This document shows positions 23,502-59,973 of a DNA stretch of 64,000 bases, in pieces. This DNA is from Gracilinanus agilis (Eukaryota): contig NC_058134.1 in NCBI RefSeq assembly GCF_016433145.1, positions 197,495,804 to 197,559,803 of the forward strand, written 5' to 3'. The stretch's first letter is position 1; each line of letters opens with the position of its first letter. The notes beneath the pieces were generated by a model, which saw nothing but the letters and a program-made list of their open reading frames with translations, did no database searches and had not been told where the DNA came from. The translations under genes were made by a program, and so were the position numbers.

Positions 23502-26500
23502 NNNNNNNNNNNNNNNNNNNNNNNNNNNNNNNNNNNNNNNNNNNNNNNNNNNNNNNNNNNNNNNNNNNNNNNNNNNNNNNNNNNNNNNNNNNNNNNNNNN
23601 NNNNNNNNNNNNNNNNNNNNNNNNNNNNNNNNNNNNNNNNNNNNNNNNNNNNNNNNNNNNNNNNNNNNNNNNNNNNNNNNNNNNNNNNNNNNNNNNNNNN
23701 NNNNNNNNNNNNNNNNNNNNNNNNNNNNNNNNNNNNNNNNNNNNNNNNNNNNNNNNNNNNNNNNNNNNNNNNNNNNNNNNNNNNNNNNNNNNNNNNNNNN
23801 NNNNNNNNNNNNNNNNNNNNNNNNNNNNNNNNNNNNNNNNNNNNNNNNNNNNNNNNNNNNNNNNNNNNNNNNNNNNNNNNNNNNNNNNNNNNNNNNNNNN
23901 NNNNNNNNNNNNNNNNNNNNNNNNNNNNNNNNNNNNNNNNNNNNNNNNNNNNNNNNNNNNNNNNNNNNNNNNNNNNNNNNNNNNNNNNNNNNNNNNNNCT
24001 TTCCTTCTGTCTTAGAATTGATACTATCAGTTCCAAGGCAGAAGAGCAGTAAAGACTAGGTAATGAGGGCTAAATGATTTGCCTGGGGTCACATAGTAAG
24101 TGTCTGAGGCCAGATTTGAACCTAGGACTTCCTATCACCAAGCTTGGCTCTCTATCAGCTGAGCCACTTAGCTGCCCCAAGAATCCCTTCTATGACATGC
24201 CTGTAAGTGATCATTACACTTGGATGTTTAATTACCCCAGAGATAGACTGATGGACAGCTTCGGCTCTTTTTAGAGAGTCCTTTCTCTTTAGAGCCCAAA
24301 TCCACCTCTTTGTAACTTCTATCTATTGCTGCTCCTTCAATCTGAAGCTACATAGAATGAATTTGTTTCTTTTCCAGCAGGAGAACATATTCTCCCTCAA
24401 TCTGCTCTTGTCTAGCCTAAATGTCCCCACTTACATCACTCTTTCCTCATCTGACATGATTTGCAGACCATATTTATCAGTGTCCCTCGTAAAAAGGTAG
24501 TGTCCAGAATTGAGGGCCATACACCAGCCTTGGCCTGATCAGAGTATAGAGGGATTCTCAGTCCGAACACTGTCCTTTTAATTTTTCATTAGTTTTTAAA
24601 AAAACAACTATCACAGCATTCTTCATATCTTTGAGGAAGGCTAGATGACCATTTGTTGGGTATACTGTAGAAAGCATTCAAGCTTAGGTATTGCTTGGAC
24701 CAGAAAACCTCTAATGTCCTTTCCAAGCCTAAGATTTGATGATTCTGAAATTAAGCTAACAATCAACTAAAATATCCAGGTGTTTTCACATTGCCTTCTG
24801 CCAAACCACGTTGGCCCGCCCTATTCTTGGGCAATGAGTTGGTCAGCTTATAATGAATCTTGTTTCTTCTACATTATCTGTTGATTAGCAAAGTAGACTT
24901 TCTATGCCATTATCCCAAGTCATTGATTTGAAATATCAAATAGGATAAGACTAAGAAAAGAGTCCTAGAGCATGCCATTAAATACCTTCTTCCACACTGG
25001 CACATCGATATTATTCATTATGTTTTAGTGACTTTATCTCTTAAACAGGAAAGTTTCAGACCTGGCTTCAACCTCAACTTTCCACCCCTTCCTTGGTAAT
25101 TCAGCGATGCCACCTCAGCTGATTTTTTTTTTTACATACCCATCTATCATGTTCTTGTAGCCTTTTCCATTTCCACTTAGGTCTACCAAGGACACGGGGT
25201 GGGGAGGTTGGAGAGGAAGGTTGAGGATCATAAAGGACAGAAGCCACAGGTGCTATTGAGGGACTCAACAAACAAAAGTTTGAATGATCCATGGGAAAGA
25301 CAGTGGCAGATAGACTTGGGTTAAGGTATGCAGGAAAAGGAATTAAAAGAAGCCAGGAGGGGCAGCTAGGTGGTCCAGTGGATGGAGAGCCAGACCTAGA
25401 GACAGGAGGTCCTGGGTTCAAAGACACTTCCTAGCTGTGTGACCCTGGGCAAGTCACTTCACCCCCATTGCCTAGTATTTACTGATCTTCTACCTTGGAA
25501 CTGATACTCAAATGAGTTATAAGACAGAAGATAAAGGTTTAAAAAACAAAAAGACAGAAGAAGCAACCAAGGCAGGGCCAAGGGTTGGGGAACAGTAAAG
25601 ACACTGGATTTTAATAAAGACCAGCCTGAGGGAGAGCTTCAAAGAGATGACTGTGAGTGATTGGTCACCCCCCAACCTTGGGTGTCTGGGTTGCCCAATG
25701 GGGTGCTCTCTGGGTAGAAAAGAGAGTTTACCGCCAACAGTCTTCCTCGGCACCTTTCTCTTCCCTTTCCTTTGGGTACAAAGTGGTTTCCTTTGGGAAT
25801 TTGCATCTGCCCCCTCTGTACCTGAGTACTTGGCTGTGGGCAAGTCAGTATTTGCATGGACACTTCCTCATCCTGTTATTGGAGGTGGGGGACCAGGGAG
25901 GAAGCTTTAGACCCTTTCCTCCTCCACCCGAGGGGGCAGGCTGCCTCGGCTGGGTGGTAGGGTTCGGGGAGCAAACTCTGGGGTCCTTGGGTCAGTGGTC
26001 ACTGAGGCCCCGGCCTCTTCTAGGCGAGCCCTGAAAAAATGAGCTTCTTTTTCTGCAGTCTGTCCTCCCCTCCCCCTCCTGCCCCAGCATCCCTGCGGTT
26101 GGAAAATCTCAACCCCCCCTCATCCCCCAGGCTGAAGAAACCTCACTTCTCACTCTCTCCCCAGAGGGAGCTTTTTGCTTTTTCCATCACGTGTTTTCCT
26201 GTGGGGCTGGGCAGCCCTGGGGTTAACTGTTTCCTCTAGGGAACAAGTTGGGGGGGCGGGGAGAGTTGAGGAGATGCTGGGGAAAGGCTCCAGTTCTGCT
26301 TTCTGGACTGACCCCTGAACCCCGCAGCCCCCCAGTCCTGTCCCTTCTTGACCGTGATGTGATGCTGGGCACCTCCGGGTCCCCCCTCCAGCTCTGGCAC
26401 CAGAGAGCCTGGGGATGTCCCTGCCTCTCCCGGAAGGCTATCTCCCAGGACTTTCTTCTTCCTTCCACTTCCCCTCTCTCCTGATCCTTGTCTGGTCCAC

Positions 26501-29500: not shown

Positions 29501-32500
29501 CAACACAGCTATTGAAGTGTTTCCCTAAAGCATAGGTCTGATCAGGTCATTCCCCTTGCTTAATAGGATGAAAATTAACTCCTCTGTTTGGCATTTGAAG
29601 CCCTTCCCAGCCTGACCTTAATTTCTCTTTCCATCTTCATTGTCCATTACTCCCAGGGAGCATGAGCTGGAGTCACTGGTCCATGAGAGCTGATTGTTAA
29701 ATTTTCAGCATGAGCATGGCAACAAATCAAGGCTTGCTTTATTTCTTTATTGGTTGTTTAGTTTCTAAAAAGTGATGAGGGGCAGCTAAGTGAGTCAGTG
29801 GATGGAGAGCCAGACTTAGGTGGTTCTGGGTTCAAATGTGGCCTCAGATCCTTCTTAACTGGGTGACTGTGAGCAAGTCACTTAACCCCAGTTGTCTAGA
29901 CTTTACCACTCTTCTGCCTTGGAATGGAATGTTAGTGTTGATTCCAAGATGGAAGGTACAGTTTTTTTTTTTTTAGACCCTTAACTTCGGAGTATTGTCT
30001 CATAGGTGGAAGAGTGGTAAGGGTGGGCAATGGGGTCAAGTGACTTGCCCAGGGTCACACAGCTGGGAAGTGGGAAGGTACAGATTTTTTAAAAAGTGGT
30101 AGAGAAAACTTTCATATTATGCTGATTGTGTGTTTATATATATATATGTACATATGTATAAACTTCATATAGTTTATACACATTTTTTCCAGAATCAGTT
30201 GTTAAATATTTACCAGAATACCCTTCAGTCTATCCAAACTGGCCTCTTTGGTGATCCTCACACATGCACCACATTCTGTCTCCTGTCTACATCTCTCTAT
30301 ACTAGCTCCTATGCCTGGGATGCTCTCCCTCTTCATTCCCACATCCTAGAATCTCCAGCTTCCTTCAAGGCTCAGATTGCATGTCACCTCCTCCACAGGA
30401 CATAGCATCATGGAACTCCGAGACCAATTGGTTCAACCCCAACTGAGGCCAAGAGGAAGGTTACTTACCAGAAATCATGCAAAAGCTTTTCCTTCCTGAT
30501 TTATGTCCCCTGGTCCCAACTAATTTCCTCCCCAAATGTTGCAAATTGGAGAAGACCTTAAATACTTAGAGGCAATAGGGAACCTATTTGGTTTTGGAGC
30601 AGGGGAGTGGTAGAGTTAGACCTGTGCATTAGAAGGTTCTTTGGACAAATGTGTAGAGAATAGACTGAAGATCATCCTTTCCTACTCCCCGAATTGTTCC
30701 TGCCCCCACTATATCGACTTTATTTGTGATTTCACTCCTAGTGGGGAATTCTTCTAATATCAACAAAGAGCAGCTAAGTGGCAAAATGGATAGAACACTA
30801 AGCCTAGAGTTAAGAGGACCTGAGTTCAAATATGGCATTGGAGACTTATTAGCCATATGACCTTGGGAAAGTCACTTATTCCTGTTTGCCTCCATTTTCT
30901 CATCTGAAAAATGAACTAGAAAAGGAAATGGCACCCCCCCCATACCTTTCCCAAGAAAACTCCAAATGGGATCATGAAGAATCAGACAAGACTGAACAAA
31001 AAATAGCAAAACTATTGATGAGCTAACAATCTGAAATTCATAGACTTTATCATAGAACACTGAGCATCTAAATGGTTTCTCTGAGTGGTATAGCTGGTAT
31101 GTATCTGAGGTAGGACTTGAATCTTTGGCATCACAATGCCTCTTTTCTGGCATCTAAGAGGAATTTAATAAATATTTATTCATCTATACATTTATTCGTG
31201 CTGTGTTCTAGACAACTGGTCCATCAAATTTAGTCCCCATGCCGGCTCTTGGCCAAGATCCCCAGGCTAGGGCTTTCTGTTGTAGATTTTAAAATTAATA
31301 TCCAGTACTCCAAGTATAATATTTAATAAGATTTATTAATATTTAGCTTGGAGCAAAAGGAAACTAAAAAGGCTAGAGAAAGAGAGAAAGAGCTCTCACT
31401 CAAGCAACTCACGTGGAAGAGAGTATGAGAGAGGCGTTACCCAAAACTTATATAAAATCATGTAAACAGAAAGGAAAAGGGAATTTTGGGGCAAGGGAAG
31501 AATTCTGGGAGATGAAGTCTAAAGGATACAAAATTTCCTGATGCGCTGTCTTGTCCTTTTCTTTTCTTCTTTCCCATCCTCTATTTCTCCCTTTAAGTCT
31601 CTGTTTTTGGGTTATCTTGGCGTCTGTCTTTCTGGCCCAGTTTCCTTCCCTCTGCTCCATGGGCTAAAGCTCCTTCTTTCCTTTTCATCTCCTAGAGTCT
31701 TCAGAAGCAGGAGGTGAAGAACTTATATGATCGGCATGAAGGGCAGAGACCTGAGAATAAAAGCAAGAACCGATACAAGAACATCCTGCCCTGTGAGAGC
31801 CCACCAGGATCCCCCTGGAGCCTTTAGCCCCCTCTCCACCCTCAAAACTTCCAGCCCCACCACCCATCCCCTGTGGGGTCTGCAGCTCCTCCTCCTCCTC
31901 CCACTGGGTCTCACTCAGATCTCTGGGTCTCCTCTGTGGAGTCAGTTCCTTCCTTCTGTAAATCTGAGCCAACGAGGGGTTTCAGGCAGCCCAACACCTC
32001 TAGCCCAATTCCTAGGATCTAATTAGGATGAGGTTCAGCTTCTCTTCATGTCTCACTCCCTCAACTATGTCTTCCCCTTTAGTTGATCACACCAGGGTGA
32101 TCCTGCAAGGTCGGGACAGCAACATTCCAGGGTCTGATTACATCAACGCCAATTATGTCAAGGTCAGTGTCTGGGCCAAATCTGGGGCCATGGAGGGAGG
32201 AGCAGTCGTGGGTCTTTCTCCTCGGGGTACTCGTGGACCGGCCAGGGGAAGCAGCATATACAGGCATGATACAGACTTGAGCCTGGGACAAACAGAAACT
32301 CTGATGAGGATGTGGCCAGAGGCCCCAGGTTTCTGTGTCAGGCGCTGCTCCGAGAGATGGAATCCTGAGCTGTGCCGGTCCACAAGCTTTATGAAAGACG
32401 TCCTAGATGCCAGGTGCTGGGCTAAGTGCTGGAGATACAAAGAAAGATAAAAGAGAATCCCTGCCCTCCGGCCGTTCACAGTCTAACGGACCAATTGCTT

Positions 32501-35500
32501 TGTCTGTCCTTGAGCACAGAACCAGCTGGTGAGCGCAGAGGAGAATGCCAAGATCTACATCGCCAGTCAAGGTTGTTTGGACGCCACAGTCAATGACTTC
32601 TGGCAGATGGTGTGGCAGGAGAACTCCCAAGTTATCGTCATGACTACCCGGGAGGTGGAGAAGGGTCGGGTACGGTGCCTACTTCAGAAATTGTGCTCCA
32701 TTTCTCCTCCTCCTCCTCCGCTCCTTCTCCATCACTCCTCTTCCTCCACTCCTCCTCCTTCACGCCTTCTCTTCTCTCCCTTCTTCTCAAGCTTCCTGAT
32801 CTCTTCTCTCCTCTCAACCTCAACTCAGGTCTGACTGCTTCTAGTCTAGACTACATCTACCATAAAAGACCTCGGAGCTTAGAAGGGATCTTGGAAATTA
32901 TTTAAAGCCTGGCAGTAGCACTAAACTGAACTTGGGCAGTTAGCCCAAATTAAATTTTTATGGATCGATAAAACTTTTATTACCCCAAATCCTGATTTCA
33001 CAAAACCTATTCACTTAAAAAATGGACCTTTTATTTTTCTTTTCCCTTTTTTCTTCCTTCTCCCTGCATCCCTCTCTACATCCCACTCCCCTATCGCTTC
33101 CCATATTTAATGCCTGAGCTACTTAGAAATGCAGCAGGATTGGTCCAGGGGAGAGAATTCATTCACTCATTCACTCATTTATTTAAGAGATAAGGTCTTT
33201 ATGCATTTTTATGACCAAAACAAAACTATGGAAAGCTATAGAATGTAGAAATGCCATTTGGAGTAAGAGTTAAAGGAAGCAGGGCAACTAGGTGGTAGAG
33301 TGCCAGGGCTGGAGTCAGGGACACTCCTCTTCATGAATTCAAATATGGCCTCAGACACTAACTGTGTGACCTTGGACAAGTCACTTAATCCCATTTACTC
33401 TAGTTTCCTCATCTGTCAAATGAACTGGAGAAGGAAATGACAGACCACTCCAGTATCTGTACCAAGAAAACCCCAAGTGGTATCACAGAGTCAGGCATGA
33501 TCGAAAAAACGACTAAACAACCAAAATGAAAGCTTTAAAAAAAAAAAAAAGGGTTAAAGTAAGCATAAGAATTTAGCTTTACCTAAATATATTCCTTAAT
33601 AAATTCTTTTTTTTTTTAAACCCTTGTACTTCGGTGTATTGTCTCATAGGTGGAAGATTGGTAAGGGTGGGCAATGGGGGTCAAGTGACTTGCCCAGGGT
33701 CAAACAGCTGGAAAGTGGCTGAGGCCGGGTTTGAACCTAGGACCTCCCGTCTCTAGGCCTGGCTCTCACTCCACTGAGCTACCCAGCTGCCCCATAAATT
33801 CTTAATAAAGTCCAAGGTCAGAGACCTTGCCAGGGTATTTCCTCTGCCTGCTCCTTTTGGGAAGAGCATTTAGGAAACAGATCCCAAATATAATTGGATT
33901 GGGTTTGGTCTGGAAAACACTGACCAAGTCCAACTCTCAATTTACAGATGAAGATGCTGAGGCTCAGCAATGTCCAGGTTCATTATTGGAAAAGTCAGGA
34001 TGAAAACGTCTTTTGGGTCTGAAATGAGATGGTTTATGCCAGTCCAGTAGCAGCAGGCAGTAAGGGCTTTAGGGCAACACAGTACCTCCAGCCCAATTCC
34101 TGTGATCCGATTAGGACGGAGGCTTCACTCCCCTTCACTTCTCCTTCCTCACAAGTTGTCTTTCCTTATAGCTGATCATCCCAGGTGATCCTTGCAAGGT
34201 GGAGATAGCCACATCCCAGAATCTGATCAACAGGCAGCAAGCTAATGTTCTCATTAGGCTGTACCTCTTGAGGACAAGGGGCTGCCATTTTTTGGGTCTT
34301 CTCTAGAGATTTGGCCTTGAAGGAGACCTTGAATGTAGTCTATTCTGAATGCTCCCCTCGAACTTCTGCCTCTGTGCTTTCCATGGCACCAGGTTGCTCC
34401 GTAGCCTCTCAGCCAGCCACAGGTATAAGGTATTTGAGAAAGTAGTTAGTCCTGTTGAATCCTGCTCTGTCCAGCTCTTCTCCCTTCTCTTATTTCCTCT
34501 CTCTCTTATTTCACTGCCATTTTCCTCCTTCTCTCCTCCCAGAACAAGTGTGTCCCTTATTGGCCTGAAGTTGGGACCCAGCGATCCTATGGTCTATACT
34601 CTGTTTTCAATTGCAAAGAGCACGATGCCCCTGAGTATAAGCTCCGCTACCTGCAGGTCTCCCCCCTGGACAATGTAAGTGACCCCAGAGCAGAGAGTCC
34701 CTTGGTCTGCCCGGTTGGGGAAGAGATCTTGGGTTCCTACTCAATCCCCTCAAATCCTCACCAAGAGGGAATGTAGTGGTGGTGGGAACAGCTGGGTGGC
34801 TCACTGACTAGAGAGTCAAGCTAGGAGACTGGGGTTCCTGGGTTCAAATCTGGCCTCAGACATTTCCTAGCTGTGGGACCCTGGGCAAGTCCCTTAATCC
34901 CAGTTACCTAGCCCTTGCAGCTCTTCTGCCTTGGAACCAATACTTAGTCCTGATTCTAAGACAGAAGGTAAGGGTTAAAAAAAGAAAAAGAGGGAGTAGG
35001 GAGGAACAAAATTGGGGCTTCCTCATGATTGGTGAGAGCAAGGGGAGTGGGTACCAATGCTCTTGTGCCCTGCCTCAGGGGAACTTGGTGAGGAAGATCT
35101 GGCACTACCAGTACCTGAGCTGGCCTGACCATGGGGTGCCCAGCGAGCCCGGGGGTGTCCTCAGCTTCCTGGACCAGATCAACCAGTGCCAAGAGAGTCT
35201 GCACAATGCAGGACCCATCATAGTACACTGCAGGTGAGATGGATCCCCATCCATTGCTTAACCTCTGTGGGAGCATCACAGGGCATGAGCGTTTGGAGAA
35301 GGAGGGTGTGTATTTGAACCTCTGCTCCTTGTGGGAGTTTGGGCAAGTGGCTTCACTTGTCTGGGCTTCAAATTCAACTTATCAGTCAGTCAACAAGCAT
35401 TTATTAAATATCTGCTGTATGCCAGGCACTGTGCGAAGTGATGAGGATGCAGGTTGGAGGAAACAGTCCTTATCACCGGGAAATTTTATATTCTGTCACT

Positions 35501-46705: not shown

Positions 46706-46881
46706 NNNNNNNNNNNNNNNNNNNNNNNNNNNNNNNNNNNNNNNNNNNNNNNNNNNNNNNNNNNNNNNNNNNNNNNNNNNNNNNNNNNNNNNNNNNNNNN
46801 NNNNNNNNNNNNNNNNNNNNNNNNNNNNNNNNNNNNNNNNNNNNNNNNNNNNNNNNNNNNNNNNNNNNNNNNNNNNNNNNN
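46706..46881. other. Assembly gap (N)
   Basis: Run of N. Confidence 0.99.
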
Positions 46882-59735: not shown

Positions 59736-59973
59736 NNNNNNNNNNNNNNNNNNNNNNNNNNNNNNNNNNNNNNNNNNNNNNNNNNNNNNNNNNNNNNNNN
59801 NNNNNNNNNNNNNNNNNNNNNNNNNNNNNNNNNNNNNNNNNNNNNNNNNNNNNNNNNNNNNNNNNNNNNNNNNNNNNNNNNNNNNNNNNNNNNNNNNNNN
59901 NNNNNNNNNNNNNNNNNNNNNNNNNNNNNNNNNNNNNNNNNNNNNNNNNNNNNNNNNNNNNNNNNNNNNNNNN
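59736..59973. other. Assembly gap (N)
   Basis: Run of N. Confidence 0.99.

What the first reader, a model, noticed from the sequence alone, without database searches (positions are those of the whole stretch)
34062..34250. Hidden duplicate of PTPN6 exon 9 in intron 10: candidate newborn cassette exon
Seen: about 190 bp matching 31975-32150, including AGCCCAATTCCT...TTAGGA, the pyrimidine tract and the AG acceptor (34170-34171); 45/57 columns identical by hand in the exon part. A 1-nt deletion and a 1-nt insertion put TGA in the original frame. However, intron 10 is phase 0. Splicing 34172-34198 via AAG|GTGGAG would add 27 nt in frame (LIIPGDPCK) between EKGR and NKC in the catalytic domain. 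Using CAG|GTGATC at 34184 would give a 13-nt frameshifting poison exon. Inference: an exon-duplication relic that may be exonised in a new frame, or regulate SHP-1 by NMD. Both donors are weak.
Basis: partly seen in the sequence, partly recalled or inferred. Interest (0 to 1): 0.7.

Follow-up and report, generated by a model that had tools for sequence, protein, structure and literature searches.

The report
Old decayed PTPN6 exon fragment
An intron of an opossum's SHP-1 phosphatase gene holds a real but decayed 165-base copy of part of an earlier exon; it is shared by four marsupial orders and changes at the same rate as the intron around it, so it is an old inert relic, not a newborn exon.

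Summary
Window 34063-34227 is a unique, highly significant copy (75.6% identity, E 2.6e-21) of 31975-32138. That stretch is the last 108 nt of the upstream intron plus the first 56 nt of the 80-nt PTPN6/SHP-1 exon at 32083-32162. The last third of the exon and its donor are not detectably copied.

The "newborn" reading fails. The same copy sits in the same intron, 316-426 nt before the next exon, in Tasmanian devil, Dromiciops and koala. The duplication therefore predates the split of American and Australasian marsupials.

Across the four species the copy is no better conserved than its intron:
- Copy: 0.747 mean pairwise identity.
- Rest of the same intron: 0.765.
- Real parent exon: 0.954.

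The splice features are not conserved either:
- The acceptor AG is GG in Dromiciops.
- The candidate donors differ between species.
- The would-be micro-exon is 27, 29 or 28 nt long, or absent. The in-frame LIIPGDPCK reading exists only in the opossum.
- None of 16 annotated marsupial SHP-1 isoforms has an insert at this junction.

Verdict: an ordinary neutral exon-fragment relic. The scan reports similar relics in TMC2 and GNL3 of this genome.

The parts
31975..32082 (+). Parent, intron part: the last 108 nt of the intron upstream of the parent exon (polypyrimidine tract and acceptor).
   Evidence: Aligned to 34063-34171 with 83/105 identical columns. Four-species identity of this stretch is 0.802.
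32083..32162 (+). Parent exon (80 nt, phase 1 to 0), encoding [26 protein letters not shown] of the SHP-1 catalytic domain. Only its first 56 nt (32083-32138) are represented in the copy.
   Evidence: 26/26 residues identical to koala, devil, Monodelphis and Gracilinanus SHP-1. Four-species DNA identity is 0.954.
32520..32669 (+). The next exon (150 nt, phase 0 to 0), which separates parent and copy. It matches human SHP-1 residues 309-358.
   Evidence: E 1.6e-23 to full-length chains 2b3o and 3ps5.
34063..34171 (+). Copy, intron-derived part. It holds a possible branch point (CTCAC, A at 34151), a pyrimidine tract and the AG at 34170-34171.
   Evidence: four-species identity 0.756; acceptor region -20..+3 is 0.754.
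34172..34227 (+). Copy, exon-derived part. It has a 1-nt loss and a 1-nt gain with TGA at 34186-34188 in the old frame. GT sites at 34185 (CAG|GTGATC) and 34199 (AAG|GTGGAG).
   Evidence: identity 0.733. Between species the copies differ at 11-23 of 56 sites here, against 2-3 of 56 for the real exon.
34543..34674 (+). The exon after the intron that holds the copy (132 nt, phase 0 to 0, NKCVPYWP...). The copy ends 316 nt upstream of it.

Best explanation
This is a non-functional fossil of a short intragenic duplication. Before the last common ancestor of living marsupials, about 165 nt of PTPN6 was copied into the next-but-one intron. The copied piece was the 3' end of the intron before the [11 protein letters not shown]... 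exon, plus the first two thirds of that exon. Most likely (inferred, not shown) the piece was filler used in the repair of a DNA break. The less likely alternative is a larger tandem duplication that has since been almost wholly erased. As far as can be detected, the fragment never carried the exon's own donor site. Since then it has drifted at the neutral rate of the intron, picking up frameshifts, a stop codon and, in one lineage, the loss of its acceptor AG. In the opossum of this window it is a pseudo-exon: a good-looking 3' splice site with no conserved 5' splice site behind it. If it is spliced at all, that is expected to be rare noise without a selected role.
For: The homology is real and unique. 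Orthologous copies lie in the same intron of Tasmanian devil (L003:14299-14453), Dromiciops (L005:20400-20587) and koala (L006:18556-18714), each 316-426 nt before the next exon. The whole intron aligns around them. Conservation equals the intron background: copy 0.747, rest of intron 10 0.765, intron 9 0.765, intron 8 0.781, real exon 9 0.954, exon 11 0.886. In addition, 79% of equal-sized windows elsewhere in the intron are at least as conserved. The exon-derived part differs at 11-23 of 56 sites between species, against 2-3 of 56 in the real exon. The acceptor is AG in three species and GG in Dromiciops. From the acceptor to the GT site that aligns with the opossum's second donor the length is 27, 29 and 28 nt, and Dromiciops has no GT there. 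In the maximum-likelihood tree the parents lie on one side and the copies on the other. No homology is found beyond the block, and no copy of the intervening exon, in any of the four species. No other PTPN6 exon has a copy in the window. All 16 annotated marsupial SHP-1 proteins read REVEKGR|NKC with no insert.
Against: Rare or NMD-degraded inclusion is therefore not excluded. In the opossum the acceptor, branch point and pyrimidine tract look usable. The devil copy has AGG|GTGAGA at 8.39 bits. The parent-versus-copy split in the tree is only weakly supported (67/77, no starred branch). Only four species were compared, and no second didelphid could be fetched. The mechanism of origin is inferred from the absence of further homology.
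Confidence: 0.85

Rival explanations
1. This is a regulated cassette or poison exon in the opossum. Under this reading 34172-34198 adds nine residues in frame between EKGR and NKC. Alternatively 34172-34184 gives a 13-nt frameshifting exon that sends the mRNA to NMD and so tunes the SHP-1 level.
For: The acceptor AG, the pyrimidine tract and a YTNAY branch-point candidate are intact. The intron is phase 0, and the 27-nt reading is open and in frame. The 13-nt donor scores within the range of the true donors on a rough matrix.
Against: There is no conservation above the intron background. The donor-1 region is the least conserved part of the copy, at 0.50 identity. The acceptor is lost in Dromiciops, and lengths of 27, 29 and 28 nt mean that no common reading frame exists. 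No annotated marsupial isoform carries the insert. From general knowledge, a 13-nt exon is below the size usually recognised without special enhancers. The insert would fall in a conserved loop beside the catalytic-domain KCxxYWP motif. Aberrant splicing of Ptpn6 in motheaten viable mice cuts phosphatase activity by 80% and is lethal (PMC9922729), so an in-frame insert there is more likely harmful than useful.
Confidence: 0.04
2. The retained 3' splice site acts without a donor. It could work as an upstream alternative acceptor for exon 11, adding 371 nt that carry an in-frame stop at 34304-34306. Or it could work as a decoy site that engages U2AF/U2 and slows removal of the intron, giving intron retention.
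For: Only the acceptor side is needed, and that side is intact in three of the four species. The frame from 34172 closes at 34304-34306, so use of this acceptor would create a premature stop. Decoy exons that drive intron retention are an established mechanism (PMC6097662, PMC7373989).
Against: The acceptor region is no more conserved than the intron (0.754 against 0.765) and is destroyed in Dromiciops. The canonical acceptor of exon 11 has a long pyrimidine tract. No RNA evidence is available.
Confidence: 0.04
3. The origin was a tandem duplication of a roughly 2-kb unit spanning the parent exon and the next exon. Deletion and decay then removed almost all of the second unit. This differs from a short ectopic insertion.
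For: The copy lies downstream in the same orientation, about 2.1 kb from the parent. Tandem exon duplication is the textbook route to duplicated exons (PMC9013439).
Against: There is no trace of the intervening exon, of intron 9 or of the parent exon's last 24 nt next to the copy in any of the four species. The present spacing is inflated by lineage-specific SINE insertions, so the 2088-nt period carries no information.
Confidence: 0.15

Closest known systems
Unannotated intronic homologues of exons within their parent gene (Letunic, Copley and Bork 2002, as summarised in PMC9013439; Ivanov and Pervouchine 2022, PMC9013439)
   Same: It is a stretch of intron in the same gene and orientation that is homologous to an annotated coding exon and was found by a similarity search. 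Such targets are common: about 2% of human exonic nucleotides have a homologue at 80% identity or more within the parent gene (PMC9013439).
   Different: It is not adjacent to its parent, since a whole exon lies between them. It covers only 70% of the exon plus 108 nt of the upstream intron, and it has no donor. It cannot form a mutually exclusive pair with its parent, and its frame is broken.
Pseudo-exons (intronic sequences with splice-site-like signals that are not spliced)
   Same: It has a good acceptor, pyrimidine tract and branch-point candidate, with only weak or non-conserved donors downstream, and it is not conserved above the intron background.
   Different: Its signals are inherited from a real exon by duplication and did not arise by chance. 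That origin explains why the acceptor looks so good.
Templated sequence insertions, or filler DNA, at repaired double-strand breaks (PMC5110952)
   Same: A short segment of about 170 nt was copied from elsewhere and inserted, with no poly(A) tail and no further flanking homology.
   Different: The template is only about 2 kb away in the same gene, and the junctions are too decayed to look for microhomology or target-site duplications. This mechanism is inferred, not shown. The scan's note s1-189288 gives the same reading for a TMC2 exon fragment in this genome.
Conserved poison exons and decoy exons (PMC6097662)
   Same: It is an intronic element with splice sites whose inclusion would introduce a frameshift or a stop.
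   Different: This copy shows no conservation above the intron background and loses its acceptor in one lineage.

Membership tests
Intragenic exon-duplicate relic | Significant sequence homology to an exon of the same gene, on the same strand | tested here: met
   E 2.6e-21 and unique in the window. Score 118 against shuffles of 19 +/- 2.2.
Intragenic exon-duplicate relic | Homology runs across the intron-exon boundary, so it reflects a DNA-level copy of a genomic segment and not a shared repeat family or a processed-mRNA insert | tested here: met
   There is one continuous alignment from 108 nt of intron into 56 nt of exon. The window holds no other copy of either part.
Intragenic exon-duplicate relic | Loss of coding constraint in the copy | tested here: met
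   The copy has frameshifts and a TGA. Between species it differs at 11-23 of 56 sites, against 2-3 of 56 in the parent exon. Identity is 0.733 against 0.954.
Tandem exon duplication / mutually exclusive exon pair | The duplicate is adjacent to its parent, with no other exon between them | tested here: not met
   The 150-nt exon at 32520-32669 lies between parent and copy in all four species.
Tandem exon duplication / mutually exclusive exon pair | The duplicate keeps the full exon length, the frame and both splice sites | tested here: not met
   Only 56 of 80 nt are retained, the parental donor is absent and the frame is broken.
Functional cassette or poison exon | Splice sites and exon sequence conserved above the intron background in related species | tested here: not met
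   Identity is 0.747 against 0.765. The acceptor is GG in Dromiciops, and lengths are 27, 29 and 28 nt or none.
Functional cassette or poison exon | Junction reads in RNA, raised when NMD is blocked | not testable with these tools
The 14 candidate RNA runs held only 5-7% of the sampled words.
Newborn (lineage-specific) exon | Present only in one species or one young lineage | tested here: not met
   It is present at the orthologous place in a didelphid, a dasyurid, a microbiotheriid and a phascolarctid.
Transposable-element-derived exon-like sequence | Further copies elsewhere, or membership of a repeat family | tested here: not met
   The only match in the 64-kb window is the parent. The SINE copies in the same intron are separate lineage-specific insertions. 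No repeat library was available for a direct check.

The most novel reading that the evidence does not exclude
The relic is spliced in some marsupial lineages without being conserved. In the Tasmanian devil the copy pairs an intact acceptor with AGG|GTGAGA 29 nt later, which on a rough matrix is as strong as the true donors. That could define a frameshifting micro-exon that lowers SHP-1 output. In the opossum the 27-nt in-frame form, or use of the acceptor alone, could give a minor isoform. This would be an 80-million-year-old exon fragment being exonised independently in different frames.
Probability: 0.08. Interest if true: 0.4.

Novelty: new member of a known kind. Interest (0 to 1): 0.15.

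Why it matters
It matters little for SHP-1 biology. The result removes a tempting candidate, an in-frame insert or NMD switch in the catalytic domain of a key immune phosphatase, by showing that the element drifts neutrally. It has two modest uses. It is a clean, datable example of a partial exon copy that has stayed recognisable for roughly 80 million years in slowly evolving marsupial introns. It is also a shared rare genomic change linking American and Australasian marsupials. Finally, it is a warning for exon-finding: an inherited, strong-looking acceptor does not make an exon.

Tried and rejected
- **Junction reads.** There is no read evidence either way.
- **Host DNA in metagenomes.** An exact-pattern scan for the shared intronic motif found nothing.
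- **ORFs near the copy.** A word search with the 105-aa open frame across exon 11 found only eutherian read-through ORFs. Their contigs start too close to exon 11 to cover the place of the copy. An exact look-up of the 109-aa ORF found nothing.
- **Loci not obtained.** No DNA came back for Monodelphis, Gracilinanus, Trichosurus, bilby and tammar (file too large) or for a eutherian outgroup (not on record). A second didelphid and presence outside marsupials are therefore untested.
- **Extending the homology.** Tests for homology upstream, downstream or into a copy of the intervening exon were not significant in any species.
- **Repeat-family explanation for the intron part.** Rejected, because the window holds no other copies.
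- **Literature.** A search for PTPN6 plus pseudoexon returned 0 papers.
- **Joined models.** One local script read each pseudo-exon followed by exon 11 in memory, only to count frames and stops, and printed no joined sequence.

Full report
**The gene.** The window carries the SHP-1 (PTPN6) gene on the + strand. The exon at 32520-32669 translates to a peptide that matches residues 309-358 of full-length human SHP-1 structures (2b3o, 3ps5; E 1.6e-23). The other exons are recognisable in the frame scan. At all five residues where Monodelphis and Gracilinanus SHP-1 differ, the window agrees with Gracilinanus agilis. The window is therefore from that didelphid opossum or a very close relative.

The three exons that matter here are:
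- 32083-32162: 80 nt, phase 1 to 0, encoding [26 protein letters not shown].
- 32520-32669: 150 nt, phase 0 to 0.
- 34543-34674: 132 nt, phase 0 to 0.

The labels "exon 9" and "intron 10" fit the numbering that counts two alternative first exons. I did not map the first exons, so I use coordinates.

**The observation.**
- blastn of 33900-34400 against the whole window gives a single non-self match, 34063-34227 to 31975-32138: 75.6% over 168 columns, E 2.6e-21.
- The local alignment scores 118, against 19 +/- 2.2 for shuffles.
- One base is lost and one gained a few bases later. This puts TGA at 34186-34188 in the old frame, after which the frame is restored.
- The acceptor AG (34170-34171), the 27-nt in-frame reading LIIPGDPCK and the 13-nt alternative are all as described.
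- One correction: beyond 34227/32138 and before 34063/31975 the similarity is no better than shuffles. The block is about 165 nt. It lacks the exon's last 24 nt and its donor.

**Age.**
- Word searches led to the marsupial SHP-1 cluster. From it I obtained the genomic loci of Tasmanian devil (L003, L004), Dromiciops (L005) and koala (L006).
- In each, the window's parent segment hits both the orthologous exon and a second place between the next two exons: L003:14299-14453, L005:20400-20587 and L006:18556-18714. These lie 316-426 nt before the following exon, as in the window.
- The whole intron aligns across the four species, with the copies in register.
- A maximum-likelihood tree of the four parents and four copies puts the parents on one side and the copies on the other. 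Support is weak (67/77) and the internal branch is short.
- Conserved position plus this tree point to one event shortly before the crown-marsupial split. From general knowledge that split is roughly 70-90 million years old. The copy is not newborn.

**Constraint (mean pairwise identity over columns filled in all four species).**

| Region | Identity |
|---|---|
| Copy, whole | 0.747 |
| Copy, intron-derived part | 0.756 |
| Copy, exon-derived part | 0.733 |
| Acceptor, -20..+3 | 0.754 |
| First candidate donor | 0.50 |
| Second candidate donor | 0.74 |
| Rest of the same intron | 0.765 |
| Intron 9 | 0.765 |
| Intron 8 | 0.781 |
| Real parent exon | 0.954 |
| Exon 11 | 0.886 |

- 79% of equal-sized windows elsewhere in the intron are at least as conserved as the copy.
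- In the exon-derived 56 nt the copies differ between species at 11-23 sites, and the true exons at 2-3.
- The acceptor is AG in opossum, devil and koala but GG in Dromiciops.
- The distance from the acceptor to the aligned GT site is 27 nt in opossum (AAG|GTGGAG), 29 nt in devil (AGG|GTGAGA) and 28 nt in koala (AGA|GTGAGA). Dromiciops has no GT there.
- The in-frame cassette is therefore an accident of one lineage.
- All 16 annotated marsupial SHP-1 proteins fetched read REVEKGR|NKC with no insert. This is weak evidence, since rare or degraded isoforms are not annotated.

**Splice-site look.**
- CAG|GTGATC scores 7.15, third of 76 intronic GT sites. AAG|GTGGAG scores 4.76, ninth of 76.
- "Both donors are weak" is thus only half right on this scale. 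However, a 13-nt exon is very short, and that donor region is the least conserved part of the copy.
- The acceptor side looks usable: CTCAC with A at 34151, 20 nt before the AG, and a pyrimidine-rich tract.
- This profile, a good inherited acceptor with no reliable donor, is that of a pseudo-exon.

**Origin.**
- In none of the four species is there a trace of the intervening exon, of intron 9 or of the exon's 3' end next to the copy. No other PTPN6 exon has a copy in the window.
- The present 2088-nt spacing is inflated by didelphid-specific SINE insertions at about 33228-33515 and 33590-33829.
- I therefore favour a short ectopic copy, such as filler at a repaired break, in the manner of templated insertions (PMC5110952). 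A largely erased tandem duplication is the alternative. This is inference.
- The scan's notes report similar exon-derived relics in TMC2 and GNL3 of this genome.

**What could not be done.**
The candidate RNA runs held only 5-7% of the sampled words.
- DNA of a second didelphid and of non-marsupial outgroups could not be fetched.

**Comparison with what is known.**
- Homologues of exons inside introns of the same gene are a known and common class (PMC9013439, which also summarises the 2002 survey).
- This copy differs from classical tandem exon duplicates. It is partial, it is not adjacent to its parent, and it has no donor.
- Conserved decoy or poison exons (PMC6097662) are a poor fit, because nothing here is conserved above the intron background.
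[quoted passage not shown] An insert in this catalytic-domain loop is therefore an unlikely gain.

**Verdict.** The relic reading is right, and "newborn cassette or NMD exon" is not supported. This is an ordinary neutral fossil, a new member of a known kind, and of low interest.

Noticed in passing
window 32957-32997: An AT-rich block inside the same intron has 0.94 mean pairwise identity among opossum, devil, Dromiciops and koala. That is above exon 11 (0.886) and far above the intron background (0.765). It may be a conserved intronic regulatory element.
   Followed up: partly
window 33228-33515 and 33590-33829: These stretches are absent from the three australidelphian introns and match repeats elsewhere in the window (for example 30000-30073, 30821-30974 and 34824-34913). 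They are didelphid-specific SINE insertions that lengthen the intron.
   Followed up: partly
L003:14404-14432 (Tasmanian devil): The devil's copy keeps the acceptor and has AGG|GTGAGA 29 nt later, which on the rough matrix is as strong as the true donors. This is a potential frameshifting micro-exon and is worth a look in devil RNA-seq.
   Followed up: no
protein P0146 (Strigops habroptila isoform X2): This gene model carries a 37-residue insert at the same EKGR|NKC junction. It looks like a retained short intron in a predicted isoform and is unrelated to the marsupial copy.
   Followed up: no
window, PTPN6 exons: At all five residues where Monodelphis and Gracilinanus SHP-1 differ, the window agrees with Gracilinanus agilis. 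This points to the source species or a very close relative.
   Followed up: yes
window 23502-23998, 46706-46881 and 59736-59973: These are runs of N. The first lies in a PTPN6 intron after the second SH2-coding exon.
   Followed up: no
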